Made by a program: the position numbers and the translations under genes. 64,000 nucleotides of DNA. Origin: Lepidodermella squamata (Eukaryota > Animalia > Gastrotricha). Under the pieces are notes generated by a model. The model did not search any database, was not told the DNA's origin, and worked only from the letters and a program-made list of their open reading frames with translations. The stretch covers positions 124,001 through 188,000 of the forward strand of contig JBLDXI010000033.1 of assembly GCA_047495785.1 (NCBI GenBank), written 5' to 3'. Of this stretch, positions 3,755 through 24,914 are shown piece after piece; position 1 is the first letter of the stretch; each line of letters opens with the position of its first letter.

Positions 3755-5173
3755 TGTCCAGCTCGCTGTTCTATATCATGAAACAAGTTCGTTTCACGAT
3801 TTGTAAAAGACTTCAGGTTTCAGTTAATCAGTAAGAAAATCTTCAAGTCAAAGAATTATTGATCATTTCAAAACAATCAAATACGATTCCGGTAGGCATG
3901 GAAAAAGCAGGACCTTCAACTACGGAGTGGGTACGGAATTCTCTCTAACTGCCTTCGCCCTCTTCAAAACCGGAAACGGTAAATGACGCCAGTCTAAAAA
4001 GGCTAAATCATTATTATATCGCCATTATATAGAAAAGAAAATGACGAGAATACCCCATATATTTCGTTAACAACTTGGAAAAGGTAAATAATCATTTTAA
4101 ATCGTTGAAAAATGACGAATGAAAATTATAAAAATGACAAATTGGATTTCTTCAAATAAAAGATGGACTAAAATATGCGATTTTCGACGATATGACCAGG
4201 ACTTTCACATGTAGCATTTTCCAACGTGCTAATTTTCTCGCGTCAGTGCGCAGCGGTAGCAATCAATTAAGCACACGATAGAAAGTTTTTAGCAAACATC
4301 GCGGAGCGAACTTGCATGTCATTTCCCAAAATATATCAATTCTAGGTCATCAAATAACCATGCATTTATGTAAACCCAGTAACATGAGATACCGAGGGAT
4401 AAATCAATTCTCTCACTATAGATATTACATCTATCGGCTTGCCATGCTATTTTCTGCGACGATCCTGAACAAATTTGCCCATTTAAAGTCGGTTTATAGG
4501 CACCGAAGGATGAATTCATTTGATTAACCTGATTTATTGGATTCGCTATTATTCGGAACTGGGCCTTATTGACTATTGGCCTCCAGTTGCAAAAACTAAG
4601 TAAATTACAGAGATAGAGCACAGCTGTCAAGTTTATCTTGGCCCTTGGCCACAACTTTATAACCAAGGTCAAAGCTAAAAATAACTTCGTACCTAATACT
4701 TATTTTGGCTTTTATTTTTCTAGTAATTCATATTCTGCCCTTGGTTTCAAGCAGTTAAAACGGTTCTAAACTGACCAGTACGAAATCTTCAGGAATAAAT
4801 CCCGGCTTCAAGTCCGAGAGAAATCGATAAACAGCATCGGCATTTGCTCGGGCAACAGCATCTTCTTAAACCTTGATTAATGGTTAACATTTTGAGAAAA
4901 TAATTCGAAACAGCTTTTTGAACGAATTCTTCTTTCGCGAGCAATCAGGTTTATACAAATCTGAAAAATTAAATTGAATTGACATGTGAATTCGGCAGTA
5001 ATAAATTATTTATTGAGATCTTTCTCATGAGCAGCAGTATGTCGAAACACAATATAGTTCATATCATTAAAATCTGATATATCACAGCTTTGAAATGAAA
5101 GTGAGCAAAAGCGGTGCAAAAATATAAAGTTTTGTGGTAGAGATAGTCATCAGTCCGAATTTTCCCCTGATTC

Positions 5174-6492
5174 TCAAACTCGGCGTCTAGCCATTCCGGT
5201 TATTGAGGCAAAAGTACCGGCAGAAATTGTCGCGGACCTTCGCGGTTCGTAGCGACTACGCTGGTCAGAATTATTCGAATTACGGACCGAAATTGAATCC
5301 GAGCATTCCGAACTAGCCAGTGCCCAAGTTTGACTGCTGGACAGTAGCGCGTTATTGTTGCAAGATAATTGATTGTTCGTATTGTTTTGAACGTTGACCG
5401 TGTTTATCCCGGTTGATGGTCGACGGCGGTACTGAACCACGCTCGAAGACCGTTGTGCCACTCGGCCACGATTGTTATTCGACGACGATCCGGCAGTTGA
5501 CGGGCGATTTGTGTGGGACTGATGCGGGTGGCGAGGAGTGATTTGCCGCTTTAGACCGTCTTCTTCATCGTTGTCGTAGTCGGATTCGTTCTCAGAGCCG
5601 AAACTCGAGTTGCTAGCACCCGCTTTTGCAGAGCGGTAGGGTACGGATTCGGTAGAGATTTCTAAGAAATTAGACGCAATATAAAGAATTTTATAGGTAA
5701 GCTAAACCGATTTTCCACAAATAACCCGGTGACAAATCAATTCCGTCAATTTTTAGAGCCTTCCATGACAAAATTACGTGAGAAAGTTAAAAAAATATAA
5801 AAAGGTTAATTACAAATTATTTTATTTTATTTAAATTTTAAATTTCAAAGTTATAAAAATTTGAAAAAGCTACCTTAATCAAATTTCTAAGCAAATGATG
5901 AGAAAAGTTTCTCATTTTTCAGCTTTCTCAAGAAATTCGTTCATAAAATTCAAAATTCAAAAATAAAATATATTGCAAGGACATCGTCTATCCAAATCCT
6001 AACTGAAATAGATGACTCACTGTTAGACGAGCAAAGTTCCTCGAGAAAGCAAATTCTCTCACGAGCTTCGAAGAGTTTTATCGCCAGAGATTGCCGTTTA
6101 CTGCTAGTTCTCGACCTCAGCTCTCGCAACTGCCCATCATAAGCCGATAGTTTGATCCTCATTTCGGCTACCATAGACTCCAGAGACCCGATAATGATGT
6201 CTTTATCAACAGCTAACTGGCATAATGCGTCACACCGCCGGCAGTGTTCGTTATTCAGGTCATAATTGCTTTGGTGGTGGTGTAAAGCGCCTTGGGATCC
6301 GTACATCTGACTACTTTGGCTGTGTTTCCGGTACAATTTTCGGAAATGATGATGCGGTCGCCATAGATGGGTAAAATCTTGGCCAGAGTTGTTGAGCACA
6401 CTGAGGGAGGATTGAGCCCTCATGGGGAGATTATCATAGCCCATTTTATCTGCTCCAGCAGCAGAGCCAACTTTACTCGGAACAGCTCCCAT
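5174..6492 (-). CDS. Uncharacterised two-exon protein with an N-terminal MGAVPS (possible myristoylation), a coiled coil and a Ser/Arg-rich tail
   Basis: ATG at 6492. A phase-0 GT..AG intron (~6004-5662) joins the 5950..6534 ORF to an exon that continues in frame into the 5174..5461 ORF. Heptad-like LESMVAEMRIKLSAYDGQLRELR. Confidence 0.6.
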
Positions 6493-6620
6493 TTCAGGTC
6501 TTAAAATCCTATAAAACCAATGAATATTCAACATTTTGAGCCCTCGAACTTGGATATCTTTTCATCAAATAGAAGATCAAAATATAAGCTCAAAAAATTG
6601 CAGCGTCTATAGACCGGATT

Positions 6621-8385
6621 TTAGCATGGAATTAGAGCACGAGAAGCTGCTCGATGAACGTGCGCAGATAAGCGATCTGAAATTTGAAAAATATATATAT
6701 AAAAAAATAGATAAATCTAGAAAAAAACTTGCATAAGTTAGGCTTTTGACCCGTGACAGGGAATTGGATCGACAGAAGTTTCGGATTCGATAAAATCCAG
6801 ACAAATAAATCCTCACATTCGCCATCTGGGAATCGTTCTCGATATTGATCTTGAGGCAAGCAATCAACCACATCAACACAACCCAGTAGACACCCATTTG
6901 GGTAGGCTTTTGGAAACGGAATCTTATCGTCTGAAAAAATTGGAAGAAATTTATTAAAATCAATAAAATATTCAAAATCCGATCGGAAATTAAAGGTAAT
7001 TTTCCAAAAAATCTTTTTGTATTATGAAGTGATAATTTACCTTGATAAAGCGCTTTGTAAAATTTTTCAACCGAAGAGATTTGCTCTTGTGTGCATGGTT
7101 TCGACGAAGAAACAATCCAAAGCCGACCTCGATGAGAAGTTGCCCAAGAACGGCCTTCAAAGAGCTTTATTCCCAGAACAATCAACGAAGCATAAGGTTG
7201 CTGGACGGATAAACAAACACCCCGATCTGTCATTTCCATCAACTGGTTATCCTGCAGACGACCAGGTCGAACCGTCAAATCGACAACTGAATTCTTATCC
7301 TCGTCATTTTTCTGATTTTTCGAGTCGCTAGACATGTACTTCGGCGTTGGGTATTCGGAATCTGCTGAAGTCAACGGATTTCTCAGGTAACTAGGGTCGT
7401 TTTCGAGCTGCTCGCGGCCGGCAAAACCAGGCGGTCGGTTACTACTCGAGTTACCACTCACCTCCTCTTCATCATCAAACGTCAACTCCTTTTGAGCAAC
7501 CTCGACAATTTGTCGACCAGCAAAATCCAACGCAACGGTTTTGTGCCGTCGAGGTCCGAATCGTTGGTCGTATAGCTTGGCCTGTTTATCAATCAACGCT
7601 TTTCGCTCCTTCTCGTTCAACCAGGCCGAACCAGTTGCGAAAAAATCGCTTTGGTCGTCGTAGATTTTCGTACGTTGCGCACTTGTTCGTTCATATTCAA
7701 GCAATTTATCACGGTGTTCAAGGGCAGCGGCTAAACTTGAGTCAACGTTGTCACCCTGTTGAGGCCCCATAACGTCTTTTAAGGTGGCTGCAGATTTACC
7801 AACATCCCCGACTGGATTACCGCAGAATAAGCAAGGACCAGGGCCTTCTTGCAGGCAAATAATTCGCCCGCATTTAACGCAATTCCCGACAAGGCCATGC
7901 CGGCTAGCTAGGCACTGGCACTGCCGGCGGCCGGGTAAAACCATCCGGTCAAGTTGAGCCGCGTCTTTCAGCGAAATAGCTTGAGCATTCGCGTGTTTAT
8001 GCTTCGAACTGGGCGATGTTTTCTGCTGGGCTGGTTGCTGCTGTGGCACTTGAAGGGGCGCGGCCGGGGCGGCGATTACCGAGTTCTTCGATTCCCGAGG
8101 TAAATTTCGCAGCCGAACCACATCGTTGATAAATCGCTTGCAAACGTCTCGTTTCATGTCCAAAAGATTTTGAAGGAAATCAACGAGAGCTTCTTCGGTT
8201 TCGGCAATCATTACATGACTAATAGAAAATTTTGAGATTTTGAATTTTTCCGAAAATTAGTAATAAACTTACTTGACAACTTCGACAGGTGGTTCAAATT
8301 GCAGGCAGTCAGTAAGTCCTTTCATGAGCCAATCTTTCATCGAAAGTTCATGGCCTCCTGACTTTTTAGGCGGATTTTTCGACAT
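6621..8385 (-). CDS. TRIP4: Activating signal cointegrator 1 (zf-C2HC5 plus ASCH domain)
   Basis: C2HC5 finger CQCLASRHGLVGNCVKCGRIICLQEGPGPCLFCG, RTKIYDDQSDFF, and ASCH CLSVQQPYASLIVLGIKLFEGRSWATSHRGRLWI. Four exons; the last intron (6677-6732) is GC-AG. Confidence 0.95.
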
Positions 8386-8771
8386 TTTCAATAAATTAAA
8401 ATTTCTACAATAGGTATAACAAATTAATTGAAAAACCGAAAAAATTGCTTTTTGTCTCAAATTGACTATCTTTCAATAGGTTTTTGAACCCAGTTAAAAG
8501 CACGTTCATCACTAAATACAAGGAGAAAACGCTCGTCACAGCTTTTTCCAAATATGAGCACTAAATAGCATACAGATAAATATAGAGAATTTTCTTTTTC
8601 AAAAACGATCACCACGAAAAGAGAGGAATATCTTCCATACACAACATAATGCACGAAGTTTTGTTGACGAGAAAAACTGAAACAATCATTTTTTTAGAAA
8701 TAAATCATTGTTTAATTTCGAGCAATGAAAGGGCAATGTGTCGTGGTCTTTATTCGAAGATCAAAAATTCA

Positions 8772-9414
8772 TCAACGAGGCCGGCCTTTCGACCGAGCAG
8801 GGTGTTTACTGTGGTGGTGATGACTTTGATGGCCGGATTGAGCGCCAGAGGTTGGAGTAGATCCAGGCAGAACGTCAATAGTTTGCCAGCCTTCGGTCGC
8901 ATTTCCGCCATTTTGTTCGTCCCAATCGGTTAATTCTGAGGTCTATAATTATATATTCAATAATTAATGGAAATTTCAATTTCAATTTATAACTCACAAG
9001 AGGAGGAAAGAGATCTTCTTTGAGAGCAAGTTTTGACGCATCAGGCCGCACAATTTCGCGAGATTTTTTCACAATCAACGGGGCTTTACTGACTTTAGGC
9101 GCCATATCCAACTCGCCAAAATAATCCGGCTCTGGTTCTGCTTCTTCCTGTTGTTTCGCTTGCTGAGCTTTCGCGGCGAGGATCTTATTTTTCGGAGCAG
9201 GTAAGGCCGGTTCCCAGTCTTGCCATTGGCCAAAACTGGAACTGCTGGACTCTACAAACACGCCTTCGAGGGGTTTATCACTGGATGATGATGAGCGGTC
9301 GAGGCCCAAAACGCGTAAAACGCGGCCCCGACATCGACAACAAAATAATGAAACGAAAGCGACAAAAATTTTGCGAAAGATGTTGCCGATCATTCGCAAA
9401 ACGACTTGTGACAT
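8772..9414 (-). CDS. EBAG9: EBAG9/RCAS1-like protein
   Basis: N-terminal hydrophobic/Cys segment, WQDW, and EPEPDYFGELDMAPKVSKAPLIVKK, which resembles EBAG9 EPDYFKDMTP. One phase-0 intron (~8997-8943) followed by TSELTDWDEQ...W. Confidence 0.8.
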
Positions 9415-10239
9415 AATTAAAACCCTAACAAAAAATATACAAAATATATATTCATTTCAATTTATTATGTTCTGCTTCATAAAAATCGGTCGTATACATT
9501 TAGAAAAGTATGTCAGCGCTACGCAGTGAATTGCCCGAAAGTTTTGTTCACAATATTGGTTTCAATTGTATCAAGGCGACAACAATTTCAACAACACATA
9601 CATTGGTGGTCAAGCTGTAAATACGCGTTCAATATGAATAACAGAAATAAACGAAGGCCAAAGTGAAAAATGCATTTATGAATTCATATGCATTGAGCGC
9701 AATTTCAACAACAAAACTGTGTCCATTTTTTCCCACAAAAAGAAATTTTCCGCTTGACCACGCACAAAGTCATGAGGCTAATAATCTCAGCCACAGAAAT
9801 TAAAATACGAAAATTCTGCGAGTGATTGGAAATACAGCACAATTTTTTACGGGTATTGAAGAAAATAGAATAAATTAAATTGACAAGAAGAGAAAACAAA
9901 ACAATCAGTGTAGTAGACTAAAATTATACTGATACAGAGGTTAAGAGTGTACATAGTAAATTGATGTACACAAAATAAAATTGTAGTAAGGTTCAATCGT
10001 AATGGAACGTCTTCTACGTATTTTATTGAATTCCATACTAGAAAAAAACAGGCGAATGATTTTCCCGTTACAACATTGCCACAAATTATTTAAAAACTAG
10101 TTGAAAGGCAATGCGTCTGAAATTTAAGAAAAGCAGATATAAGGCAGATTTGGATCGATCGTTTTTATCAGCTGAGTGAACGTGCCACCATTTACCGAAA
10201 TTTGCTGTGTGTATGTGCTCGGGAGATCATCATCAATCA

Positions 10240-13200
10240 TCACTCAGATAAAAGTGGTCGCTGGTGAAAAAAAGCGAAATTATATGATCGAATAAACCCA
10301 TCACCGATATAAACTAGCTAAGCTGTAATTTCTTGCGTTACCTGTTCAGGATTGACAATGTTCGGCTCCATGGAATCGGTTCCATCTGAGTTTTCAGACG
10401 CTGTTCTATTGTGGCCGTTCTTGTTGTTGGAAAACACGCCAGACGATATTGGTGATAACGGGGCTTTTATGACTCGAAACACTGTACCTAAAAATATTTG
10501 GGAAAAAATCCACCTTAATCATATATTACAGATACAATCAAAATTTTGCGAGCAATTTATATTAACCATGGAACCGGCTCTAAAATACGGCGGAGTGATG
10601 AGCATAAAAAGTAACATGTGAAGAGTCTTGACAAAATTAAGGCGCAAAAGAGGCGCTTTAAATATATCTAAACACCCGCAACCAAAAAGCAAGCATTTTT
10701 TTCAAAAATTCGAATGTGATAGAATTTGAAGCCAAGACTGAAAAAATGAATATTTTTCACACACTATATTAATGGGTCTGCAGGTAATTGTCTACCAATC
10801 AATCACACTTTCTTCGGCTATTTTGCGCAATAAAATTAGCAAAATTAGTTCTAAAATTTGGGAGAAATTTTACCTGCTCTACCGTTTGATGGGCTGTATT
10901 CGACAACTTTCCGCCGATAGCCGGATTCAGACAGAGCCGGTGAGCCGGGAACTACCCTCTCGAGTACGCTTCGAGTAATATCGACCGTATCTTCCGGAAT
11001 CGTCGTCGCGTCATTATCTCCGAGAATGAAAGCCGCCTTCGTAACTGCATCTTCATCCTCCTCGTTCGGCTCTTCTTCAAACAACATGCCAGAGACGGCG
11101 CGGCGCAACAATGACGCCTCTATGCTTTGAATCGCCGTCGCACTTGCCTGAGAAAATAAAAATCGCGTTAATTATAAATTGTACACGAAAAATCTTTGTT
11201 TTAGTCAAGTATCTAAACAGAAATGATAAAGACAGCGGTATAAGTAAATGATAAGTATTTTTAGAATGCATTGCGGTTATCATTAAGGTGGATCGTTTCA
11301 AGCGTAAAATTTCAGCGGCTATTCTATGAAAAATAGGAGGTTATTTATGTAAATTGGCGTGTTTTTGCGCTCACAAAGCCTGTGTCGGGTAAGCAAAAGA
11401 CGTCATCATCATCGTTGTTATCTTCAGCGGCCTCGTCCTATACGTATTAATCAATGTAAACAGCGTGTATTTATTTTTCTTGCCTTTGACGGCGGCAATG
11501 AATTGGACGAGCTATTTTCAGAACGTGGCAGAAGGCCCGAATCAAAACTGCTCGACTGCCCTTCTGGCACATATCTCTGCCGCTTATTGCTGCTGAGAAC
11601 CAGCAACGAGCTCGAGTGCCGCCGCTGGATCACGTGGGGTGCCTCGTTATGATGGTGGTTCAAAATGTGATTGGCCACAAACTTTTCAGATAACTGAAAA
11701 GCGCGTGGGCCATAAAAAAATACACGGCAGTGATAAACAAGAGCAAATTAAGGTGGATTGATTAAACACGCCGAAAAACACGCGTGGCTATCAATAGCCG
11801 AGTAAATAAAGCATTCACTTCAAACCGGGTGGCAAGAATAAGAAAAAGCTAGGTTAAAATTACCGATGAGGTCATTGCGGGCGGATCTTGGTTGACAACA
11901 TTCGCCACATTCGTCATGACCAAGTCGCCGATAACGGACTCGCCCTCACCATCGTACGACTGAACAGGCGTTTTCAAGTCTTCGGCGGCTGAATCCGGCG
12001 TGACATAGCTATCGTGCACTTCCGCGATCACTTGCGGAACAGTCAACATCTAATTTACAGGGGTAGAAAAAACATGCGTCAATATGAGAAAAATATTGAT
12101 AGATAAAGAACAAGCAACTAGAACTCAAGATATAAGTAACAAGGCGAAGGAAAAAATTTCGCCTTAATGTCCCGTGAATTTCTTTTTTGTTCAAAATTGA
12201 AACTCACACAGGTAATTGAATCAGATTTTTAAACAAGATCTTTAATATTATTTAAAAAAAACAAGTAAAAATAAGCGTATATGCTGTCTGATTAAACTTT
12301 TCCAAAACTTCAGATAATATGAGTTAACGTATTTTTCCCGATATTCCCGAAATTTTCGGCAAAAATAATGCCGAGTTAACAATTTTCAAAACACTGAATT
12401 TTCAAGAAAAAAATCGAAAATTAGACAATATGATGTCGAATTGAAAGAAAGTCGAAAAGGAAGAACCAGCAGAAATGCGGTCAACTAATAGCTGAGAAAC
12501 ACTCTTGCGATTGAAGTTCAACTTTTCAACCATGCTTTCAGGCGGCATTCTTGGACTGAAAAATCAATCAAGCTAAATCAGTCGGCATCGTATTTCTATC
12601 CCTTATTCATACTGCTACCATGGTAAACGACTAAAATGGCTCGAATTTTCAACTCACCAATGCTGATTTTGGAGCATCTTTTGATGTAGGACCATCCATA
12701 ACACTAGTAGTTCGAGATACGCTGGCTGATTGGCCTTGGGATACACCAACCTGACCACTGCTGTCAAATTCCGTCGATTTCAGCGAAGAAATTGCGGCGG
12801 CAAACAACTGCCAATCGCCGAAAGACATCGGCAAAGAGTGTCTCAGGTCTTCGAGGTTACAAATCGCAAGAACTGGGCCGCAAATGTTGTTCTCAAGCAG
12901 CAACTCGCGATACCGATCGACGTTATTCCGCGAAATGTACGGAATTTTCGCCATAAAATCGCACACTTCCTCAACACTCAGCATAGCTAGAGGTTTGCCG
13001 GACTTGACCACCTTAACTATCGGGGCAGGGGGCGGTTTCGTCGCAACTGGAGCGTTAACTGATGGCTGGCGAGATGGACTAGGATGGCCGATTCCTGCGG
13101 GCTGGTTATAAATCAGAATCCGGTTTTGATGTGCGTGGTCGCGAACAATTCTACGCAGATACGGGTCAAGATTGACGGTAAATCGCAGAAAGGTGACTAC

Positions 13201-16200
13201 ATCGTTCAAAGTCAGCAAAGGATTTGAGCTACTCAAGGCAGCCTCGAGTTTTAAAGGGCTTTTATCCATGAAACGCATAGCATCGTTCGGCGGCATTAGC
13301 CGCTTCACACTGATATAAGCTGAACTGATAGGTGTTTTCATATCGTAATTCTGCGAGCTGGAAGCCGTGTTTTCGATATAGACCAAAATCCAAGACAAAT
13401 GGTACGGCCATTGTTCGGTTAAATTAACCCAGGCTGTTAGGTTGTACCAGTTGAAATGAACCCCACTTGCGTGTAACAGGCGAGCCATGAATGCGCAGAT
13501 ATTGGTAACACGAGTCAGCGTTCGAGGATTCACATCGCTGAAATACTCCGCACTCATACTGCCGATGAGTTCGGACAGACCGGTCGAGCCTTTCGCAATG
13601 GCAGCAACGTTGGGGATGCTCATTAGATATGAATTCTCCTCATTCGGTACGTAGGATGAATTTCGGTGGCGACCAGCGGCTTGCGAAACAGTGCTCTTGA
13701 TACTGACTGTATCCGCCTTAAAAGAATAAAACTTGAAATTAGAAAAGCTAACTCATTATTTCAAGCGAAAATTCAAACAAATTGGGCTGAATAGGAATGC
13801 ATTTATATCGCCAAGATCGATTTAGAATAAATAAAGCAGTTAGTTTCGAGAAATTCAACTAAAACACCAGGTTGGCGGGAAAATTCCAGCCTCAGAAGGT
13901 ATATTGTTATTATCCGCGGGTTGGATAATAAAACGCGACTACTTAACGTACATTTTCAGGAATTGCAATCGACGAAAAACGTCGAAAAGACTTATTGTTT
14001 TCGGGCTAAAACTCAACGATTCATGAATCATATTAAATTTATACCTGTTTATTCCTCGATCTCATCAAATAACGCTGTTTGACAGGATCAGGTCCAACTC
14101 CTCCTGCCACGGATTGCTGCGAGGCAAAAGGCTGTGGTTCAACTGCAGAGTGTTTAATCGCAATCGAAGGCTGGGCCTGCAGAAAAATCGGCAGATGAAC
14201 GACCGATCTCAAATAGTCATGCCCCGTCATTTGAACGCCCTCGTAATTTGACGAGGCCAAATGCGCGTCTAAATGTTTGATTATGATGTGAGGATCCAGC
14301 ACGAGGACGTTGATGAATGGAGCTCGGGATTCGCTGGCGAAATATCGATGCACTACATCGAGCATGTGAACGACATTGGCCTGGTCGTAGGTGTCCAGTT
14401 CGTCGAGGATGACCAGAAAACGAGTCTGGGTATTGGCGAAAACGTCGATGGCGTGAACGCATCGAGCCAATAGATTGATGTGGTACTTGACCAAGCGACC
14501 AAGCGCCTCCTATTTTCACGAAATAAATTAGAACTCACATATTAGATTGAAAGATGGGTAATTTTAGCAAGTGGCAAAAATAATATTTGGCACCAAAATA
14601 TTTTTTGAATTTTGAAACTCAACAATTTTATAGCCCCAGAATGGTTATTAAAAATTTGAAGAAAAAACCCGAATTCGAGAATATTTTCAAAAATTACATT
14701 TTGATCGAATCGAAAATTACCTCTGTTAGCACCGAATTTTCAGTCTCGCTAGCCAAAAGCTGGGCGTAAGGCGGGCGAATAGAAAGGTAGCAGAATCGAC
14801 AAACAACCGCGAAAAACAAAATCAACAGGCCAAAGAGTGACATCGCCGACAAAATTATGATAAAAATGCTGGCAGTGGTATCTGAAGTAAAAATCAAAGT
14901 GATTAACAACATTTTGGAGATGCCAAAAATAATTACCATCGCTTCCCTCAGCGGGGAAAACTCCTCTCCACGTAGCAAACGGCGGCCAGGTCGCGTAAAT
15001 TAGCAGGCAGTCAACGTAGAAAATTAGCCCCCAACCAAAAGCCCAAAAGTGGAGAGGTAGACAACAGAATTGGCGGTAAGACCGATGGCTGGACTCATTC
15101 GGCTTGAAAATCAGCAGCAACCGGCTGGTCAACGAGCCGTACGCCGCCTCAACTTGCAGGTACATTTCCGCTAATACCGCTCGAATGATACCGCCAGGCC
15201 GGACATTACCGCTGAATTTCGGACAATTGACAACGATGAAACGCAACTGTTGCAGGTATTGAGTGTTCGCAACGGGGTTGCAGAAAATCACGTTAGTTAT
15301 GATTGACAACTTCCGCATGAAAGATTCGAGGTTTTGACTGAGTGAAATCACCCATTTCGCGGCTCGATGTCGCGAAAACCACCAAATTGCGAGAAGAGCG
15401 CAGATCAGAGCGAGTAGAACTGATAGCGCAACAATAATTCCGAGAAACCAAACATCTCGCGATAGGGACAGGGTACAAACAAGCCCGACCAATGCCGCGA
15501 TGATGCAACTCAAAAATATGACAAGGGGTGAAAATCTGAATAGCACAACGCCGTCTTGTATTGCGTATTGGTACAAATATTCCTTGAGCTGGGACACAAC
15601 AAACGACTTGCCTGAACCCCATCTTGCGTACAATCCAACGGTTAAAGGAGTGCATAGGGTAGGTTCTGATAACATGACTGCCAACGAACTCGAGTACAAC
15701 TCGTAACCAACTAAACTTTGACTATGCTCGGCCCTGTTCAGATTTGTCGTTCCGAATAGCTGCGGCAAAATCGGCTGATCTTGCCCTTCGTCGATCGAAT
15801 ACGGCGTTATATTGTGCTTATTCGGTTTATACAACAACCTAGCGTTTCTAGGATTCCTCAGGAGTAACTGAACAATTTTCCTCGAACGCTGCCTTAATGC
15901 TATGTGAAGAACTGTGTCGCCATTTTTGTCTGTTGCGGTTAGTTTCGCATTCGAATTCAACAACATTTCAACAATAGTCGCGTTTTTTAGCTTGACTGCC
16001 TTTAAAAGTGGCGTGCTTTTATCACCAGCTGCCACTTCAACATCAGGCCGGTACGATAGTAGTAGACCGACTGTGTCTTGGTACATTTTTTCAACTGCCA
16101 AATACAGTGCGGTTTTGCCCTCCTGACCCTGGTGGTTAATATCGATTCGGCCTTCGCATAGTTTTCGCACAACCTCGAGCCGCCCAGCTCGGACGGCGTA

Positions 16201-17770
16201 GATGAGGGCTGAATCGGATTTTTTATCGGTCAGGTTCAAGGAAGCACCGGCATGCATCAGGGCTGATACGACTTCGAGATGCCCTTCTTTCGACGCGATC
16301 ATTAAAGGTGTGCAGCCCTCCTAAAAAATGCAAACAATTAAATATAGAGGAAAGTCAAAATATGGGAAATAATTTTTTCAAAATCGGTATTTGAATTTAT
16401 TTTCAATTTTTTCATAAAATTTTGATATTGCGGACTTACCACATCAGTCATGTTGACATTGGCATTTGACATGTTCAGTATGACGTTAACCAGGTCGATA
16501 TTTCCAGCTTTTGCAGCCAGCATAAGCGGCGTTTTGCCATTCTAAATTTAGCAAAAAAAACAGGATGTTTTCTCTAATTTTGCATCGATTATTTGCTTAC
16601 AAGGCCAGGAATGTCTGGATTTGCACCGTTTTGTAGTAAATATTTAGCGACCGTAACGCGATTGTGCCGGCAGGCCCAGAAGAAGGCTGTACTGCCGAAC
16701 TTATCGGTAACATTCACAGAGGCGCTGTTTTGCACCAGCAGCTTGCAAACGTCCTCATGACCACGACCAGCTGCCCACATCAGGCAAGTCATGTTGTTAT
16801 CGGCCCGGAGATTGACGTTCGCTCGGCCAACTCGAACGAGCACGTCAGCAGCCGCCTGCAGGCCTTTGTAACAAGCCCACATTAGCGCGGTAAATCCGCC
16901 CTAAAAAATCGAAATAAACTTGTTTAATTCGTCGACACAAAACATTCCCACGTCAATTTCTAGACACGGCTAAAAATTTACTGATTCTGAAATAAATCTA
17001 AAAATCCCAAAATATATTCTCACTATTTTCGAAAAGTTTTTCAAGTATGCTGTGATTCCCGATCCATTCAGAAAAATCTAGAATTTCACTTCGAAAAATT
17101 CTCCGTAAATCGTAGAAAATTCAGAAAGTTTGCCCCAATTTGTTCCCATGCATAAAATTTAAAAGTTGAAAAATCTCATTGATAAAATTAGGGTGAAAAT
17201 GCACTTGGTATAAGAATTGGCTGAAGCCTTGAAATTTTCCCAACTTATGATACTTTCAACCATAAGATCACTTACACTATCTCTGTAGTCGATAACGATA
17301 TCGTCGCGCCGTTCCAATAAAAACTCGACTAAACAGCGAATAGTCTCGGCATGTCCCATTTCAGCCGCGATCATTAGCGCTGTTTTCCGATCCTTGTTGG
17401 TCCGCTTGCAGAGCGATAGAAAAGTATCGAATCGCATCAGCTCTTCGATAACTTCTTTCCGACCATACCGACACGCCAACATCAACAGACTTTCGCCCTC
17501 GGCCGCATCGAGAATGCATCCTAGATCGTAAGGCCGTTTTGCGCGAAAATGGTCGATGATAACGCTGGTTTGCCCGGTTGACAGGGCTTCTCTAAACTGA
17601 GAGGCGACGTTTAGCGCACTGCTAGCTGGGGTGCTCAAACGGGGTGTTGTGGTCACCTCGATTGTTGGCACTCGCAACTGGCTGGATGATTGCTGAGCTT
17701 CCTGCTCACTTTGAAGGGCAGCGATAACATCGAATGTATCCAATGATATGCTACCCTCGTCTTCTGCCAT
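10240..17770 (-). CDS. KIDINS220: Kinase D-interacting substrate 220 kDa (ARMS): ankyrin repeats, KAP NTPase with TM segments, SAM-like domain
   Basis: Multiple ankyrin repeats (17770-15800), Walker A EPTLCTPLTVGLYARWGSGKSF, TM segments, Walker B RFLVILDELD, WVNLTEQWPYHLSW and SAM-like LLENNICGPVLAIC...MSFGDWQLF. The phase-compatible 3' exons end in RPLLSE*; the 3' end is less certain. Confidence 0.93.
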
Positions 17771-17895
17771 ACATCAAAACTCTACATTAAACAAATATAA
17801 GATCATCAAATTTATTCTAATTTGAATCAAAGAAAGCTTGATCGTGTAGAAAAAATCGACAAAAAATCACGATGAATCATGGAAAATTGCATAAA

Positions 17896-19449
17896 TTAAC
17901 GCTTTTCAAGCGCGAGAGACAAAACACCCTTAGGATACAATAAAGTTTCGTAGGTTTGATTAAAACTGGAGTCGCCAGTCCAGCGCAATTTAAATCGTGA
18001 AAGAAGCCTAACTACTAAGGCCATCATTTCCATCTCAGCAAAACGCCGCCCAGCACACATTCTAGCACCGTGTCCAAATGGAAGAACTAAGAAAGGATGA
18101 GCTTGATTAATACCAGCCTCGGATTTAAGCCACCGCTCTGGGGCATACGCTTCAACGTCTGGCGGCGATGGAATGAACGATTTGGCCTTGAACAAAGAAT
18201 GCGTGTTGATTTCAACGACAGTTCCTGCAGGTATAAAATAGCCTCCGATGACTAAATCACGTTGCGGGATTCGAGAAATATCTGTCGTGATTGTGTGTAA
18301 TCTCATCGCCTCCTTGACGCAAGCTCGAATATAAGTTAAATGACTGGCTAAAATGTCATAATTCAGCGATCCGTTGCCCATTTTTAAGGCAGCCTGTGCT
18401 TCCTCAGCTGCTTTGTTTTGCGCATCCGAGTTTTTGGCGAGGCAATATAGAAGAGCAAGCACTGTGGGCGATGTAGTTGAAAGCCCGTCAAACATCATTC
18501 CGAGGCAGATAATGTCACGCTCTGATTTCGAAAGATCCTCCCGTTGAGAAAAATGGTAAAGCACAGGGTAAGTTTCAGCAGCTTTCCGCTGGTCAGTCTT
18601 CATTAATTCGTGATATTTGACCCAAGCTTCGTCTAACCAACGTTGCCCTGTGCCAAAAACAACATCCTCCTCGACAGATAATTTGCGAAATGAGGGGCAC
18701 ATTGAGGGCAAGTACCGGTAAATTGGTAGGCTATATTTTAGCCGAGCTGTTAATTGAAAGACGTTCCTATTCCCTTCGTACAAGCGATAGCCAGGTTCCG
18801 GGTTTTCGAAGTAACCCAGACGTTGACGCGATACCACGCGAGCGCCAGACTCCATTTGCCAAATAGGAATTTTCTTTTCTAAATCAGAGACGTCACCAAA
18901 CTTAGCAAACCAATCAACGGCTTCGCAAGCAACTTCATCAACAATTGTCAACAGTGATTCTGCCAATCGTTCCGGTCGCATGAGAAAGGGAGTAACGGCA
19001 GTCCTCAGCCGTGTCCATGGCTCACCATTGGTGTTCCCTAAGCCAGGACTCATCTCTCGCTGTTGGCGATATACCTGTGTGGTTTCCATGAGTGGTTTTA
19101 TATACGGCGTCTTTCCATCTGCTTGGAAAACGACTTTGGCAAATTCAGGCTCAAAAATATGAATAACAGTTTCGCCAAGCCTCTCCTCCCGAACGAGCGG
19201 CCCATATTCTGCATACATTTTCAATAGTGTCATGTGATAATCAGTAACAGGCCATTTTCCAAAGCGATAGTTGAAATAAGTTCCAAAATAAGGCAAGCCT
19301 CTTGGTCCCGGCATTTCACTCAATGGCCGAGAAGCATTCACATCAGAGTTGACTGTGGCATTAGTGCTCGATGCTAAGGTCCGCGAAATCGAGCGAAAGC
19401 TAGCCAGATAAATATGATTTCGGCTTAAAGCTTTCGTAATAGCCACCAT
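17896..19449 (-). CDS. Mitochondrial-clan cytochrome P450, CYP44-like, intronless
   Basis: Arg/Ser-rich N-terminal targeting-like peptide, PGP hinge, I-helix DGLSTT, EAMR (ExxR), PERW and heme motif FGHGARMCAG. The segments ETTQVYRQQREMSPGLGNTNG and DGLSTT resemble CYP44 as I recall it. Confidence 0.9.
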   Translation of the reverse strand: MVAITKALSRNHIYLASFRSISRTLASSTNATVNSDVNASRPLSEMPGPRGLPYFGTYFNYRFGKWPVTDYHMTLLKMYAEYGPLVREERLGETVIHIFEPEFAKVVFQADGKTPYIKPLMETTQVYRQQREMSPGLGNTNGEPWTRLRTAVTPFLMRPERLAESLLTIVDEVACEAVDWFAKFGDVSDLEKKIPIWQMESGARVVSRQRLGYFENPEPGYRLYEGNRNVFQLTARLKYSLPIYRYLPSMCPSFRKLSVEEDVVFGTGQRWLDEAWVKYHELMKTDQRKAAETYPVLYHFSQREDLSKSERDIICLGMMFDGLSTTSPTVLALLYCLAKNSDAQNKAAEEAQAALKMGNGSLNYDILASHLTYIRACVKEAMRLHTITTDISRIPQRDLVIGGYFIPAGTVVEINTHSLFKAKSFIPSPPDVEAYAPERWLKSEAGINQAHPFLVLPFGHGARMCAGRRFAEMEMMALVVRLLSRFKLRWTGDSSFNQTYETLLYPKGVLSLALEKR

Positions 19450-20533
19450 CCTATTGCTAATGAAATGAGAACAAAGAAGAAATAAATGAACTGTATGAAT
19501 GCACGAAAGAAACAATAAAAATATTAACCAGGGGCAGAAGTGGCAGATAGCAACATTTTACTAATAGAAAAATTTCGTGCCAAGAAGACAACAGGAATAA
19601 TGAGATATTCAATTATTCGAGGATCTCGCTCTCGATTTCTCACAAAAGGAAAGTAATCGTTGATCGTACATTGGGTAAAAAAATATGCTGATTGTTTATG
19701 TCAAATCAAGTCAAGTTATCCTTAATTCACGAGGCATTTGAAAATTGGAAAGATGAATACATGTATTGACGATTGACTATTGATATCTCGCAGCTTTTGT
19801 TTTCTGTTTAACGTCAAGAACCAGGTTAATTTTCGGGGTATTTTTGGCACTAAAGTAGCAGTGCAACCCCGCCGAGTCACAACTGTGGTGCAACATGCAT
19901 TTTGCTGACAAAGCTAACAGTTCGAGGCACAGGGCAGCTCTTCGACGATAAATCAAAAGCAGAACATACCCCCGAAAAAGCCGGCAAAAGCCAAGAAGGC
20001 GCCAAATACTTTCATTTAGTTTTAATCGATTTTATTAAAAAGTGTATTAAATACATCTCATCTCAAAAATGTAATTTTTTGGTATTTTTTTGTGCCATAT
20101 TTTAAAAAATCTTTTCATATACGCGCCCAAACGCCCAAATGTTGCGCCCGAGGGAAAGCCTCACCCACCGAAAATCCGTTTTTTGCCGAAGTTTTTTGGC
20201 GTGACCCACGGTGTAATTGGGTCGTTGATTAGTGCGAAAGTCGAAGTTGAAACTTGGACAAATCCATTGATCAGGATTTTAGTGATTTCTAACCATTTTT
20301 TATTGGAGTTTTCGAGTGGGAGATTCCCCACCCTCAATATATGCTTTCTTCATTTTAGTATTTTTCCGACTCATTATTCATAAGGTTTCATTGTATGAAT
20401 CACGTCGTTTGCGATTTTTGCTATCAACCTTCGAGTTTTTGTGTAATGTGTAATAACTTCGTGACATTTGACAGTTCTACGATCCAACTGTTCAGCTAGG
20501 CATTGTTTCTATTTCTGTTAGATTTTTATTACA

Positions 20534-23500
20534 ATGAGGGCGAAGGGAAATGTTGAATCCACCAAGGTTGAAGATGTCAAGGGATCACAGATCCGTTTCA
20601 AAAAAGTAAGTAGATCAAATTATTTGTTGCTAGTTTCCAATTACGTTTATTGTTTCAGCCCACCACTGAAGAAATGCGCTTAGCGCAGCTGCTCGATGAC
20701 AAACAGCAAGATGTCGAGCGCGAAAACATTATTCTTCAGGTTATCGATGCTACCAGCCGTCTCCGTGACGATGTCATAATTGCACTCCATGATTGCAATT
20801 ATGATCCCATCAGAGCCATCGAGATCCTGATGGATCACGATGAACTAGCCAAAGTTCGTTCACTTTTTGCCGTCCTCGGTAGCGCGAACCATTTCTTTAT
20901 TTTATAGGAAGAATGGCAAGAATGCGGCATAGCCAATAAAAAAAAGAAGAAAGCAGCGGCTGCTGACGATGTTCCTGCGGAAAACCATGATGACGGCTTT
21001 CACACAGCTAATGAAAACCCTCAGAACTCGTCCCGGGGCAATCGCCGATCTCGCGGTGAAAAAGATCGGTCAAATGATGCCAGGGATAATTCAAAACCAC
21101 ATGCTGGTCGCCCTACTCGCGGCCGAGGAGGTTGTTATCTGCAATAATATCTAATTTGCGAAAAGCCTAACTTTGTACTTATCTAGATGACCGTAGAAGC
21201 CGCACTGTTGGCGAACGTCACCCTTTATCCGGCAGCAATAACGAAAATGCCGCCGACTGGAACGAATCTGAAGGTGTTAACCATGCGAATCACAAGCCTT
21301 ATCACAGACGTAATTATGAACCTGGAGCTGACGAAACTAACGAAGTCAGTGGCCGTCGCGGCGGACCTCGTGGAGGAGCCAGCGCCCGGGGTCGGTCGTG
21401 GTTTGGTGGTCGCAACGGTGGCGATGGCCATGCCCGTGGAGGCATGCAAAACGGCGTCGGTCGAGGCCGATACGCCGATCGCCAAGGCGGCGGGGGTCAT
21501 TCGGAAAATGCCGACAATGCCAACTCCTTTACTGTTGGCACTTGGGAAAATTCTGGCGGAAACGGCCCAAGTGGTCGCGGCGGTAACACTGACGATTACG
21601 AAATCGATGAGTGGGATGGCAGCTTGACTCAAACTCAGGTTTTCGAGCGTAGTAACGCTAACCAAGACTCGTCGAAACCCTCATATGGAGCTATTGGTGC
21701 CAAGCCAGGGCATGTTCAATCTCTGCATGTTGACGATTCAGTCAACGGCCCGAATTCCGCCCACAGCCCTAATGCTGGTCCGATTCGCGTTAGTCTCGAT
21801 AATGTGATGAACGTTGCTGGTCCCACGCATAAAGGTCATAAGGATGAGGCTGAAGCCTCGGCGAAGAATAAATCGCCTCGCCGGGAGCCTCAGGAGAAGC
21901 CGAAACCGCCCACGCCTCAAAGGCAACAACAGGAAAAGCCGACTCAACAGCCGCCCCAAAGATCTCAGCAACAGCCAAAAACGGCTCAGGAACCTCCGGT
22001 GGTTATTCTCGACAACCGGCGACATGTTGTGGAATCGCACGGACCGGCTGGTCTGCGGTTCGGATCTGGACTTGACTCGATCGGACTTTCAGTCCACGGC
22101 AGTGGGGCTAATGGTGAGAAACAGACCACTCAGAGCCAAAATGCGACGCAGAACCGATCTGGTTTCCCGACCTCGCCGTATCGTGATCAACAACAGCAGC
22201 AAAGCAGCTCCCCGACTAAGCAGCCTGAGGTTCAGGCTGAGAAAGCGCCGGGTTTCGCTGCGAATCGATCTGCAATTGCCCAGCAGCAACAACAAGCCGT
22301 CGGAGCTCCGTCTCGCCCTCAACAAGCAGGTGGTTTTCAACAACAGCAACAAAACGAACAGCAATACACAGCGCCCTTCCAACGGCCTCCTTCGTCCGGG
22401 GCGTCGAAACCGGCTGGACTCGACCCGTCGATCACGTCGGCTCGAAACCAGTCGCAGAGCCCGTATCAACAGCAGCAACCAGTGCAATCAGTCAAGCCCG
22501 CCGAGCCTCAACAACAGAATTTCGCGAATCAAACTCGGCAATCAACTCAGCAACAGCAACAACAGCCGCAGCAATCTTCGGCTCAGGCCTCGATTCCTCC
22601 TCTTTTGTTGCAACAAAGCGGTGCGAGCCAACCGGTGTACACGGGCGCGTCATCGAATTCTAGCGCATTTTCTGGTAAGATAACTAATTATTTGTTTATT
22701 CGAATTTTTGCTAATGAAATCGAGTTATAGAGCTTTTTTGGTCCTAATTCAGGTTCAATTTTGGAGCTTTAATTATCCTTTTTTAATTTTAGGTCAACAA
22801 TCACAACAACAACAAGCCGCGACAAAGTTGACGGAATCAATGACGAAATTGAGCGTTCAGGACGTTGTGAAATCGCCTCAAAGACAACAACAGCAACAAC
22901 AACAGGCGTCGCAACCCCAGCCCCAACAACAGCAGCAACAACCACCGACCTCGAATGCTTCGTCCTCGGGAAATTTCGATCAGGCTAACATGATGAAATT
23001 CCAACAGCAACAGCAGCAGCAACAACAACAACAACAGCCGCAGCAAAACCAGGCCCCGCCACCGGCTGCCTACGCTGTTCCGACCCAGCAGGGTACGATG
23101 CCCTACTATTTCCCGCAATACACTGGTCAACAGCAGCAACAGGCGAATCCAGGACAGCAACAAAACTCGCAACAGAACCAGCAAAACTCGCAAACCGCGT
23201 CGGTCAGCGACTACTTCAACACGAACGATGTTGCGAATTTGTACCAGCGGAACCTCCTGGAACAGGCCGGTCATCAACAGCAGCAACAGGCGGGCCAGCA
23301 AGCGGCCGCCAGTCCGATGATGAAGCCGAACCAGGGCGATTCGCGCCAACAACCCCTCGGCCCGGAGCAGTTGTTGAACATGGCAGCGGCGCATGGCCAG
23401 ACGAGCGCGCCGGGTAGTGCGCAACTGCCGCCGCACAGCTCGGCAGCCGGTTTGCCCCCGGGTGGAGTCCCGCCAGCGTTTTTGACGCCGCAGCTCTTCT

Positions 23501-24914
23501 ACCCGTTGATGCAGTTGTTCGCCGCGAACCCGACTCTGATGGCGCCGTTCTTGCAGCAAGTCCCGCCGCCACCCCCGGCCGCTGATATCAAGCAGCAACA
23601 GCAGTTTTTGCAGGCGGTTGGCATGTCGCCGTTCCTTCACTACCCGCAGCAACAGCAGACGCCTGGATCCTCGCACCCGTCGATTAGCGATGACGTGTTG
23701 GCGAGCGCGGCAGCGGCGGCTGGTCAGCACTCCGGCCAGCCGGGTTCGATGGTGGTCGGGCATCAGGGCCCGCAGGACGCGTCGAACATTGTCGGCCAGC
23801 ACCAGCAACAGAGCCATCAGCAACACCAGCAGCAATCCATCAGACCGCCACCAGGATTTCTTCTCCCTGTCAGGCAGTCGAATTCAGGTCAGTTGGACGC
23901 TAGTTTATTATTCAACAATTTCTGCAGGTGGTTTAATTTCGACTAAAAATGAAATTAGTCTGCAGCAATCGAAAAATATAAAATCTAATGTAACCGAAAA
24001 TTGACGCTAAAATTTATATTAGATTCGTGGGGATTTTCTTAATTTCAGTCGTTGAATTCTATGATAACATTCAAATAATTGAGACCGCGAAATTGATCAT
24101 TTTTTACCATTGCTTCCTAAGCTATCCAGACTATTTTGATGTTCTATTTTGGTCCGAAATTTCCTGCTGTTCCAGATTTCTGATAAATTTGTCATGCAAA
24201 TCATTGCGAGTATTTTTTGCCTGTGCCGTCATTCAATCGAAAAATAAATAGCATTTCAAGTCTCGTAGAGCGGCATGGTAATTCACTCAGCCTAGAATCG
24301 ATTTTTATTGATCATGACCCAGTTTTCAAATGATGCTATTTATTAGAACGGTGATGAGCAAAAAAGTACCATATCGAAAGTATCAACAAAATTGTTCATG
24401 ACTCAATGGGTCTGAGGCCATTAAAATAGTTTTTGTATTACGTCGCCTGCAAGAATTTTAATTCTCGTCTGAATATTAGCAAGTCTTTATTTACGAGTAA
24501 GGAGACCAGTAATGCGCAGGGTGTAAACAGCAGGCATTGTGACCTCATCTGCCTTTCTCGGGTTGAAAAAACGCGTAAATTGCGCGATTAATTTCAAATG
24601 TCATCGTGACGGTGATTAATTTGATTATAAAATTCAAAATTTTCCATTTGCTTTTCTGAAAATCCAACTTATATTTTGCAGGAATGAACATGGCTCCATC
24701 GAACAACAACGATGGTGGCATGAGCGGATTCCGCGCCTTCCAGCAGCAGCAAGACAAGGGCCCGTCGTCGGGCGCTGGTGGTCCTCCGGGTCTGTTCGGC
24801 CAGAACCCGAACCAGGCGTTTCTAGCGGGCGGTGGCCAAGGCCGGCAAGCCCCGCAACAGCCCGGCGTCATGAAGCAGTCGCACATGAATCAGTACTGGA
24901 CGCAGAATTCGTGA
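20534..24914 (+). CDS. UBAP2L: UBAP2/UBAP2L (lingerer) ortholog: UBA domain, RGG region, Q-rich low-complexity C-terminus
   Basis: PTTEEMRLAQLL followed by a UBA-like segment (VIIALHDCNYDPIRAIEILM), EEWQE..KKKKK, RGG repeats, EWDGSLTQTQVF, and a C-terminal QYW. About six exons. Confidence 0.88.

What the first reader, a model, noticed from the sequence alone, without database searches (positions are those of the whole stretch)
5174..19460. Candidate five-gene eukaryotic operon resolved by spliced-leader trans-splicing (CYP44 > KIDINS220 > EBAG9 > TRIP4 > orphan)
Seen in sequence: five consecutive minus-strand genes with stop-to-ATG spacers of 125, 825, 386 and 128 nt. Each ATG is preceded by a T-rich YAG acceptor-like site: AG at 19451-2 (1 nt before ATG), 17782-3 (11 nt), 9425-6 (10 nt), 8405-6 (19 nt) and 6509-10 (16 nt). 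Spacers of ~125 nt leave little room for a 3' UTR, a promoter, a first exon and an intron. Established: unpaired acceptors just 5' of the ATG and short co-oriented spacers are the signature of SL trans-spliced operons in nematodes, tunicates and flatworms, which typically hold unrelated housekeeping genes. Inference: this is one polycistronic unit. The first gene has a possible cis donor (CTG|GTTAAT at ~19528).
Basis: partly seen in the sequence, partly recalled or inferred. Interest (0 to 1): 0.85.

Follow-up and report, generated by a model that had tools for sequence, protein, structure and literature searches.

The report
Conserved five-gene operon-like cluster
Five unrelated genes sit nose to tail on one strand of a small invertebrate's genome, each with a lone intron-end signal before its start codon. 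The same five-gene block survives in a distant relative, so it looks like an animal operon cut up by spliced-leader trans-splicing, but the leader was not seen at this locus.

Summary
Five minus-strand genes (CYP44, KIDINS220-like, an EBAG9-like gene, TRIP4 and a conserved orphan) have stop-to-ATG spacers of 125, 825, 386 and 128 nt. Each ATG has a T-rich YAG acceptor 1-19 nt upstream, and no spacer holds a donor.

New evidence:
- RNA-derived contigs confirm four introns. They also show that the two long "spacers" are mostly 3' UTR of the upstream gene. The EBAG9-like transcript reaches within 70 nt of the TRIP4 acceptor.
- AATAAA lies 28 and 35 nt before two of the acceptors.
- In a relative (59-65% protein identity; three overlapping metagenome contigs) the same five genes keep their order and strand, with spacers of 65, about 348 and 99 nt and an acceptor before each downstream ATG. 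Both outer flanks differ.
- Three of the four downstream acceptors share the 11-mer TAGRRTTTTRA, found nowhere else in the 64 kb.

Not shown: no spliced leader, no bridging RNA and no promoter. No RNA contig covers any of the three 5' ends examined.

The operon reading is likely (about 0.55) but unproven. Operons of this type are known in other phyla. This scan already found the same layout, and a leader, at other loci of this genome, so this is a further member of a known kind.

The parts
17896..19449 (-). Gene 1: CYP44-type cytochrome P450. Single exon, 517 aa, stop included.
   Evidence: Pfam p450 at E 2.6e-59. Best named hits are 'probable cytochrome P450 CYP44'. 65% identical to the relative's protein P0001.
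19450..20533 (.). 1.08-kb region shared with a divergent plus-strand UBAP2-like gene (ATG 20534, own acceptor at 20520-1). It is the candidate promoter region of the cluster. Acceptors lie at 19458-7 and 19452-1, with a possible cis donor GTGAG at 19643.
   Evidence: The divergent neighbour is also syntenic in the relative (L001 5800-8870). No promoter was demonstrated.
17771..17895 (-). Spacer 1 (125 nt). AATAAA at 17816-17811, acceptor ...tttgtttaatgtAG at 17783-2, then AGTTTTGA.
   Evidence: The relative has a 65-nt spacer with ttataatttAG 11 nt before the ATG.
10240..17770 (-). Gene 2: KIDINS220-like scaffold protein (ankyrin repeats, KAP NTPase, SAM_KIDINS220). Multi-exon, stop TGA at 10242-10240.
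   Evidence: Pfam. Collinear tblastx matches to L001. RNA joint 10261-10341 and an upstream-exon loose end at 10489. Frame check.
9415..10239 (-). Spacer 2 (825 nt), mostly KIDINS220 3' UTR. Distal AATAAA at 9466-9461, acceptor tttttgttAG at 9426-5, then GGTTTTAA.
   Evidence: RNA contig 9618-10152 plus further depth in bin 9456-9649. Hexamers, motif.
8772..9414 (-). Gene 3: EBAG9-like small membrane-anchored protein. Two exons, intron 8943-8997.
   Evidence: RNA joint 8942/8998. Homologues in three related species (L003/L085, L086). The family name is not confirmed by tools.
8386..8771 (-). Spacer 3 (386 nt), mostly EBAG9-like 3' UTR. Acceptor cctattgtAG at 8406-5, then AAATTTTAA.
   Evidence: A spliced RNA contig runs 9287 to 8475 without a break. 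Acceptor.
6621..8385 (-). Gene 4: TRIP4 / activating signal cointegrator 1, 514 aa. Exons 8385-8273, 8218-7041, 6930-6733 and 6676-6621.
   Evidence: Pfam, named hits, RNA joint 6930/7041, model. The C-terminal frame is fixed by conservation with L003/L085.
6493..6620 (-). Spacer 4 (128 nt). Acceptor ttggttttatAG at 6510-09, then GATTTTAA. No canonical AATAAA.
   Evidence: The relative's spacer is 99 nt with cttctgtAG.
5174..6492 (-). Gene 5: conserved orphan, 319 aa. N-terminal MGAVPSK (myristoylation-like), a coiled-coil stretch and a conserved C-terminus. Intron 5662-6020.
   Evidence: RNA joint 5661/6021. Full-length homologue in L085 3417-4471, with the last ~45 aa 78-86% identical. No Pfam family.
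4994..5173 (-). 3' UTR of gene 5, with AATAAA at 5014-5009. This is the end of the cluster.
   Evidence: RNA depth is present in bin 4994-5187 and zero in 4800-4993. Hexamer.

Best explanation
The five genes form an operon-like transcription unit of the spliced-leader (SL) type.

Proposed mechanism (inferred): transcription starts in the 1.08-kb region shared with the divergent UBAP2-like gene and runs through CYP44, KIDINS220, the EBAG9-like gene, TRIP4 and the orphan. Each upstream message is cleaved and polyadenylated a few tens of bases before the next gene. Each downstream message gets its capped 5' end by trans-splicing of a leader onto the unpaired T-rich TAG acceptor 10-19 nt before its ATG. 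The unit ends at the orphan's AATAAA (5014-5009).

Shown here: the gene models, the spacers, the unpaired acceptors, upstream 3' UTRs filling the long spacers, and conservation of the block.

Inferred: the leader addition at these sites, the polycistronic precursor and the single promoter.
For: (1) All five ATGs have a T-rich YAG 1-19 nt upstream. The joint probability is 1.3e-4 under composition-keeping shuffles, against 5.5% for all ATG triplets in the window.

(2) No GTRAG donor occurs in any spacer. RNA contigs cross 8475-8775 and 9618-10152 without a joint. The acceptors therefore have no local partner.

(3) Run X1 is RNA: it has four GT..AG joints and zero depth inside the 359-nt orphan intron. 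It shows the EBAG9-like transcript reaching 8475, 70 nt from the TRIP4 acceptor. It shows the KIDINS220 3' UTR extending into 9456-9617, near the AATAAA at 9466.

(4) AATAAA lies 28 nt before the KIDINS220 acceptor and 35 nt before the EBAG9-like acceptor. This leaves no room for a promoter plus a first exon.

(5) L001, L003 and L085 overlap at 99% identity, so they are one relative species (CYP44 65%, TRIP4 59% identical). They carry the same five genes in the same order and strand, with spacers of 65, about 348 and 99 nt and an acceptor before each downstream ATG. The DNA beyond the divergent neighbour and beyond the orphan is not syntenic.

(6) Two further relatives, L002 and L086, also have an acceptor 11-12 nt before the KIDINS220 and EBAG9-like ATGs. 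L086 has an AATAAA about 55 nt upstream of its acceptor.

(7) None of 80 TRIP4 loci from other organisms has any of the other four genes beside it. The linkage is specific to this clade.

(8) Unchecked leads: earlier follow-ups on other loci of this genome report a leader pasted on at exactly such acceptors.
Against: No leader was seen here. The RNA contigs stop at 9287, 8177 and 6353 and leave all three examined 5' ends uncovered. Only one X1 loose end was listed, and three further loose ends were not shown. The CYP44 and KIDINS220 5' ends were not examined at all.

No contig bridges two genes. Contigs cannot show starts, ends or strand.

The 386-nt and 825-nt spacers could hold internal promoters inside the upstream 3' UTR.

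The divergent neighbour is conserved too, so order conservation is not unique to the same-strand genes.

TRIP4>orphan and EBAG9>TRIP4 have no canonical poly(A) hexamer near the acceptor. No SL RNA gene lies in the window.
Confidence: 0.55

Rival explanations
1. The cluster is not one five-gene unit but two or three shorter ones. The tight pairs CYP44>KIDINS220 and TRIP4>orphan would be dicistronic. The EBAG9-like gene and/or TRIP4 would start from internal promoters in the preceding 3' UTR, as in 'hybrid' operons, and their outrons would be trans-spliced.
For: The 825-nt and 386-nt spacers are long enough for a compact promoter, and they are similarly long in the relative (about 850 and 348 nt). 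Proximal AATAAA or ATTAAA signals lie at 10027, 8754 and 8716, so some upstream transcripts may end early. No bridging RNA was seen.
Against: RNA contigs run through the proximal signals to within 70 nt of the TRIP4 acceptor and towards the EBAG9-like acceptor. No donor or separate first exon exists in the spacers. All five genes stay together in the relative while both flanks changed.
Confidence: 0.25
2. The five genes are independently transcribed and merely packed tightly. Each would have its own promoter overlapping the upstream gene's end. Microsynteny would be kept by interleaved regulatory DNA or by the low rearrangement rate of a small block. The TAG acceptors would serve trans-splicing of monocistronic outrons.
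For: In SL-using animals monocistronic genes are trans-spliced too (PMC7986045, read). Acceptors before ATGs also occur at non-clustered genes of this window, for example 3771 and 55671. The divergent neighbour, which cannot be in the operon, is conserved as well.
Against: With 125-nt and 128-nt spacers (65 and 99 nt in the relative), a 3' UTR, a poly(A) site, a promoter and an outron would all have to fit. In spacer 1 only 28 nt separate AATAAA from the acceptor.
Confidence: 0.15
3. There is no trans-splicing at these sites. The T-rich tract plus TAG plus RRTTTTRA would be a core-promoter or initiator element, and transcription of each gene would start there.
For: TAGRRTTTTRA occurs only three times in 64 kb, always at these gene starts. 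TRIP4 has a one-base-longer variant. RNA contig coverage does not extend upstream of any of the sites.
Against: The sites look like the confirmed cis acceptors of the same genes (T-rich tract plus YAG). The motif is only partly kept in the relatives, whereas the acceptor is always kept. Earlier follow-ups report leader addition at such TAGs elsewhere in this genome (unchecked).
Confidence: 0.05

Closest known systems
Tunicate operons (Ciona intestinalis, Oikopleura dioica), with a single SL and little or no intercistronic region
   Same: Co-oriented unrelated genes. The poly(A) signal lies almost on top of the next gene's trans-splice acceptor. The reference cut-offs are 60-84 bp and the median intercistronic distances 1-33 bp (PMC7986045). 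Here AATAAA lies 28-35 nt before two of the acceptors.
   Different: Ciona operons are mostly dicistronic, and this cluster would have five cistrons. The leader is not shown here. The lineage is a protostome, so any relation would be convergent.
Caenorhabditis elegans SL2-type operons
   Same: Several unrelated housekeeping-type genes in a row. Stop-to-ATG gaps are of the order of 100 nt (about 100 bp intercistronic; PMC7986045). There is a U-rich element close to the trans-splice site, and gene order is conserved between species.
   Different: It is unknown whether a specialised SL2-like leader exists here. The U-rich motif lies just after the acceptor, not about 50 nt before it (position of the nematode Ur element from my own knowledge). 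The acceptors are mostly UAG rather than UUUCAG.
Flatworm and chaetognath SL operons
   Same: These are spiralian or gnathiferan lineages with SL trans-splicing and polycistrons (chaetognaths: PMC12460157, listed; platyhelminths: PMC7986045).
   Different: No shared leader or shared operon content was tested. The phylum of this genome was not verified here. Earlier notes guess a gastrotrich, and the window's GC of about 42% fits the 43% of Lepidodermella squamata (PMC11660948).

Membership tests
SL trans-spliced eukaryotic operon | Two or more co-oriented genes with short intercistronic distances | tested here: met
   Stop-to-ATG spacers are 125, 825, 386 and 128 nt. The long ones are mostly 3' UTR according to the RNA contigs. 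The relative has 65, about 348 and 99 nt.
SL trans-spliced eukaryotic operon | A 3' splice acceptor with no local donor just upstream of each downstream cistron | tested here: met
   Acceptors at 17783-2, 9426-5, 8406-5 and 6510-09. No GTRAG in any spacer. No joints in the RNA contigs across the spacers.
SL trans-spliced eukaryotic operon | A common non-genomic leader joined to the downstream mRNAs at those acceptors | tested here: inconclusive
No leader-type loose end was listed, and three loose ends were not shown.
SL trans-spliced eukaryotic operon | The organism has SL RNA genes (leader exon, donor, Sm site) and SL-capped mRNAs | not testable with these tools
   No SL RNA family or other candidate in the window (Rfam at gathering and at E<=1). 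The rest of the genome is not available to me. Earlier scan notes report an SL-like gene in the rDNA spacer and leaders at other loci, which I did not check.
SL trans-spliced eukaryotic operon | A polycistronic precursor from a single upstream promoter | not testable with these tools
   Contigs of poly(A)-type RNA cannot show precursors. None bridges two genes. No CAGE or chromatin data are available.
SL trans-spliced eukaryotic operon | Gene order kept by selection (supporting, not defining) | tested here: met
   The five-gene order and strand are identical in a relative at 59-65% protein identity. Both outer flanks are non-syntenic. The linkage is absent from 80 TRIP4 loci of other organisms.
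EBAG9 (RCAS1) family, for gene 3 | Significant sequence similarity to named EBAG9 proteins | tested here: not met
   No Pfam hit even at E<=5. No usable Atlas hit. phmmer against 1.84 billion representatives found only two clade-specific fragments. The resemblance rests on motif order recalled from human EBAG9.

The most novel reading that the evidence does not exclude
This would be a five-cistron SL operon in a phylum (probably Gastrotricha) where neither SL trans-splicing nor operons are reported in the searched literature. It would have been conserved as a block across a deep split within the clade. It would use a compact coupling module: AAUAAA, about 30 nt, a pyrimidine tract, UAG, then RRUUUURA. 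In this reading the U-rich element just inside the downstream 5' UTR acts as the downstream element for 3'-end formation of the upstream message, and so links polyadenylation to trans-splicing. That would be functionally analogous to the nematode Ur element, but placed after the acceptor.
Probability: 0.25. Interest if true: 0.65.

Novelty: new member of a known kind. Interest (0 to 1): 0.45.

Why it matters
If confirmed, the cluster adds a well-delimited multi-gene example to the case that this lineage uses SL-resolved operons. The literature searches found no report linking gastrotrichs or Lepidodermella with spliced leaders or trans-splicing. That bears on the open question of how often operons and SL trans-splicing arose in animals.

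The block has clean breakpoints on both sides in a diverged relative, which makes it a good test case for whether operon membership constrains genome rearrangement. The TAG|RRTTTTRA motif gives a concrete candidate signal to test.

On its own it is one more instance of a layout this scan has already flagged many times in this genome.

Tried and rejected
**Leader detection by reads.** Only two runs hold the stretch, and both are kept as contigs. Laying them on 4800-10600 confirmed the introns and 3' UTRs, but no contig covers the 5' ends of the EBAG9-like gene, TRIP4 or the orphan. The 25 unmatched letters of record 3 most likely lie at a heterozygous bubble boundary (7832), not at a leader junction. 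Position 8177 has no acceptor.

**Transcript contigs through the protein index.** The N-terminal KIDINS220 exon found only one metagenomic relative. The species' own proteins are not in the collection, so no SL-bearing transcript could be fetched.

**SL RNA gene in the window.** Rfam at gathering and at E<=1 gave only tRNA-Val.

**JGI metagenome scan with a TRIP4 profile.** It returned 80 loci, the best at 36% identity, none from this clade and none with the neighbouring genes.

**Nucleotide conservation of the spacers and the putative promoter region between window and relative.** Nothing above chance.

**Naming gene 3 and the orphan.** Pfam, the Atlas and the phmmer search gave nothing.

I reject it as weak next to the GTRAGT donors of the confirmed introns. 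GTGAG at 19643 is a better but untested candidate.

**Chance.** I reject chance as the explanation for the acceptors.
Full report
**What is there**

The region 5174-19449 carries five genes on the minus strand.
- Pfam identifies a cytochrome P450 in the single long ORF 17896-19515.
- It identifies ankyrin repeats, a KAP NTPase and the KIDINS220 SAM-like domain in exons between 17770 and 12649.
- It identifies the three TRIP4 domains (zf-C2HC5, TRIP4_3rd, ASCH) in 6607-8211.
- The best named relatives of the P450 are 'probable cytochrome P450 CYP44' of molluscs and a priapulid, at about 40% identity.
- The best named relatives of the fourth gene are 'activating signal cointegrator 1'.
- The third gene has no Pfam, Atlas or distant phmmer match. 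The EBAG9 name rests only on motif order as I recall it from the human protein: an N-terminal hydrophobic anchor, W..W, EPDYF...KK and SEL..W. I therefore call it EBAG9-like.
- The fifth gene has no family. It starts with MGAVPSK and is a real gene: it is spliced in RNA and conserved in a relative.

**Exact anatomy**

I rebuilt the models from the sequence and from four GT..AG joints seen in RNA-derived contigs.
- CYP44: 19449-17896.
- KIDINS220-like: 17770-10240.
- EBAG9-like: 9414-8772, intron 8943-8997.
- TRIP4: exons 8385-8273, 8218-7041, 6930-6733 and 6676-6621. The last intron is GC-AG. The C-terminal frame is fixed by conservation with the relative.
- Orphan: 6492-6021 and 5661-5174.

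CYP44 has a second, better acceptor at 19458-7.

**Is it more than chance?**

A T-rich YAG within 20 nt upstream occurs at 5.5% of all 2085 ATG triplets in the window. Under shuffles that keep the composition of each 60-nt upstream segment, the per-gene probability is 0.09-0.24 and the joint probability is 1.3e-4. None of the four spacers holds a GTRAG donor.

**RNA evidence**

Run X1 behaves as RNA of a close strain or species. It has four minus-strand GT..AG joints and zero depth inside the 359-nt orphan intron and downstream of 4994.
- One spliced contig runs from 9287 through the EBAG9-like stop to 8475. The '386-nt spacer' is therefore at least 300 nt of 3' UTR, and only 70 nt remain before the TRIP4 acceptor.
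- A contig covers 9618-10152, and more depth lies in 9456-9617. The '825-nt spacer' is therefore mostly KIDINS220 3' UTR, running towards the distal AATAAA at 9466-9461, which is 35 nt before the EBAG9-like acceptor.
- In spacer 1, AATAAA (17816-17811) lies 28 nt before the acceptor.
- The orphan ends at AATAAA 5014-5009.

The data do not show a leader.
- From the depth arithmetic, nothing in X1 covers 9288-9455, 8178-8474 or 6354-6545.
- All three examined 5' ends are therefore missing, and no contig bridges two genes.
- These are assembled contigs, so the holes prove nothing either way. They are at least compatible with mRNA 5' ends lying near the acceptors.

**Comparative evidence**

Three metagenome contigs overlap at 99% identity and so come from one relative species: L001 (18 kb), L003 (5.3 kb) and L085 (9.5 kb). 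Its proteins are 65% (CYP44), 56-67% (KIDINS220 pieces) and 59% (TRIP4) identical to the window's.
- Joined, the contigs read: a NIDO-AMOP-VWD gene (-), a UBAP2-like gene (-), then CYP44 > KIDINS220 > EBAG9-like > TRIP4 > orphan on the plus strand, then unrelated opposite-strand genes.
- The five genes and the divergent UBAP2-like neighbour match the window (20534-24914 on the plus strand). The DNA beyond on both sides does not match.
- The relative's spacers are 65 nt (CYP44>KIDINS220), about 348 nt (EBAG9-like>TRIP4) and 99 nt (TRIP4>orphan). Each downstream ATG is again preceded by a T-rich TAG.
- Two more relatives known from short contigs show the same. L002 has ttgttttttAG 12 nt before the KIDINS220 ATG. 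L086 has an AATAAA about 55 nt before tttcatttttAG and the EBAG9-like ATG.
- The spacer sequences themselves are not alignable, so the acceptors are kept while the surrounding DNA has diverged.
- A TRIP4 locus from a more distant animal (L004) and 80 TRIP4 loci from JGI metagenomes carry none of the other four genes.

**A shared motif**

The 11-mer TAGRRTTTTRA occurs three times in the 64-kb window on both strands (0.7 expected). All three hits are the acceptors of KIDINS220, the EBAG9-like gene and the orphan. TRIP4 has TAGAAATTTTAA. The first gene lacks the motif, and the eight confirmed or modelled cis acceptors of these genes lack a T-run after the AG.

In the relative, a T-run followed by RA is kept after the EBAG9-like and orphan acceptors, and loosely after the TRIP4 one, but not after the KIDINS220 one. 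The divergent UBAP2-like gene also has TAG|ATTTTTAT, so the motif is not strictly confined to downstream cistrons.

My reading is an inference. The motif sits 12-25 nt beyond where cleavage would follow the AATAAA signals, so it could be the U-rich downstream element of the upstream gene's poly(A) site. That would tie 3'-end formation to trans-splicing.

**Interpretation**

The anatomy is what SL-type operons look like in tunicates and nematodes. Intercistronic distances there run from 1-33 bp up to about 100 bp (PMC7986045).
- For CYP44>KIDINS220 and TRIP4>orphan, the space (125 and 128 nt; 65 and 99 nt in the relative) cannot reasonably hold a 3' UTR, a poly(A) site, a promoter and an outron. 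I rate co-transcription of these pairs as likely.
- For the two longer spacers, the RNA contigs leave 70 nt or less, and roughly 30-190 nt, not covered by the upstream transcript. An internal promoter inside the 3' UTR cannot be excluded.
- Overall I put about 0.55 on polycistronic expression with trans-splicing. About 0.25 of the rest goes to a split into shorter units, 0.15 to fully independent genes and 0.05 to a promoter-motif reading.

The first gene may be trans-spliced as well, or cis-spliced.

**Context and novelty**

Earlier notes of this scan report the same layout at many loci of this genome. They also report a leader joined at such TAG acceptors at a few loci, an SL-like gene in the rDNA spacer, and a guess that the animal is a gastrotrich. 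I used these as leads only. I re-tested only the 'order conserved in a relative' type of claim, on my own locus.

The window's GC of about 42% fits the 43% reported for the Lepidodermella squamata genome, whose paper mentions neither operons nor trans-splicing (PMC11660948). Full-text searches for gastrotrich or Lepidodermella together with spliced leader or trans-splicing found nothing relevant.

The mechanism is a known kind. Its occurrence in this lineage may be unreported. This locus is a further member, notable for its clean five-gene conserved block and for the post-acceptor motif.

Noticed in passing
window 17774-17784, 9417-9427, 6501-6511 and 8396-8407 (minus strand): TAGRRTTTTRA occurs only three times in the 64-kb window, each time at the start-proximal acceptor of a downstream gene of this cluster. 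TRIP4 has a one-base-longer variant. It may be a U-rich element coupling polyadenylation and trans-splicing, or a 5' UTR signal.
   Followed up: partly
window 6677-6732 (minus strand): The last TRIP4 intron has a GC donor (TTAT|GCAAGT), where the relative has GT (TTAT|GTAAGC). It is a GC-AG intron, supported by reading-frame conservation of the C-terminus.
   Followed up: partly
window 17768-17776 (minus strand): An out-of-frame ATG lies 4 nt upstream of the KIDINS220 start (GATGTATGG). It opens a 7-codon overlapping uORF within the 11-nt leader-proximal 5' UTR.
   Followed up: no
window 20534-24914 (plus strand): A GC-rich (about 54%) multi-exon UBAP2-like gene lies head to head with CYP44, with the two ATGs 1085 nt apart. 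It has its own TAG acceptor 12 nt before the ATG, and the arrangement is the same in the relative. This suggests a conserved bidirectional promoter region.
   Followed up: partly
window 5174-6492; L085 3417-4471: The orphan gene has a myristoylation-like MGxxxS start and a coiled-coil stretch. Its C-terminal ~45 residues are 78-86% identical in the relative, far better conserved than the rest of the protein. No family was found.
   Followed up: partly
window 32790-32864 (minus strand): A single tRNA-Val(CAC) gene. It is the only Rfam or ARAGORN hit in the window.
   Followed up: no
window 5811-5861: The DNA run X2 shows several contig breaks and loose ends inside the AT-rich orphan intron. These suggest a repeat or a structural polymorphism there.
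   Followed up: no
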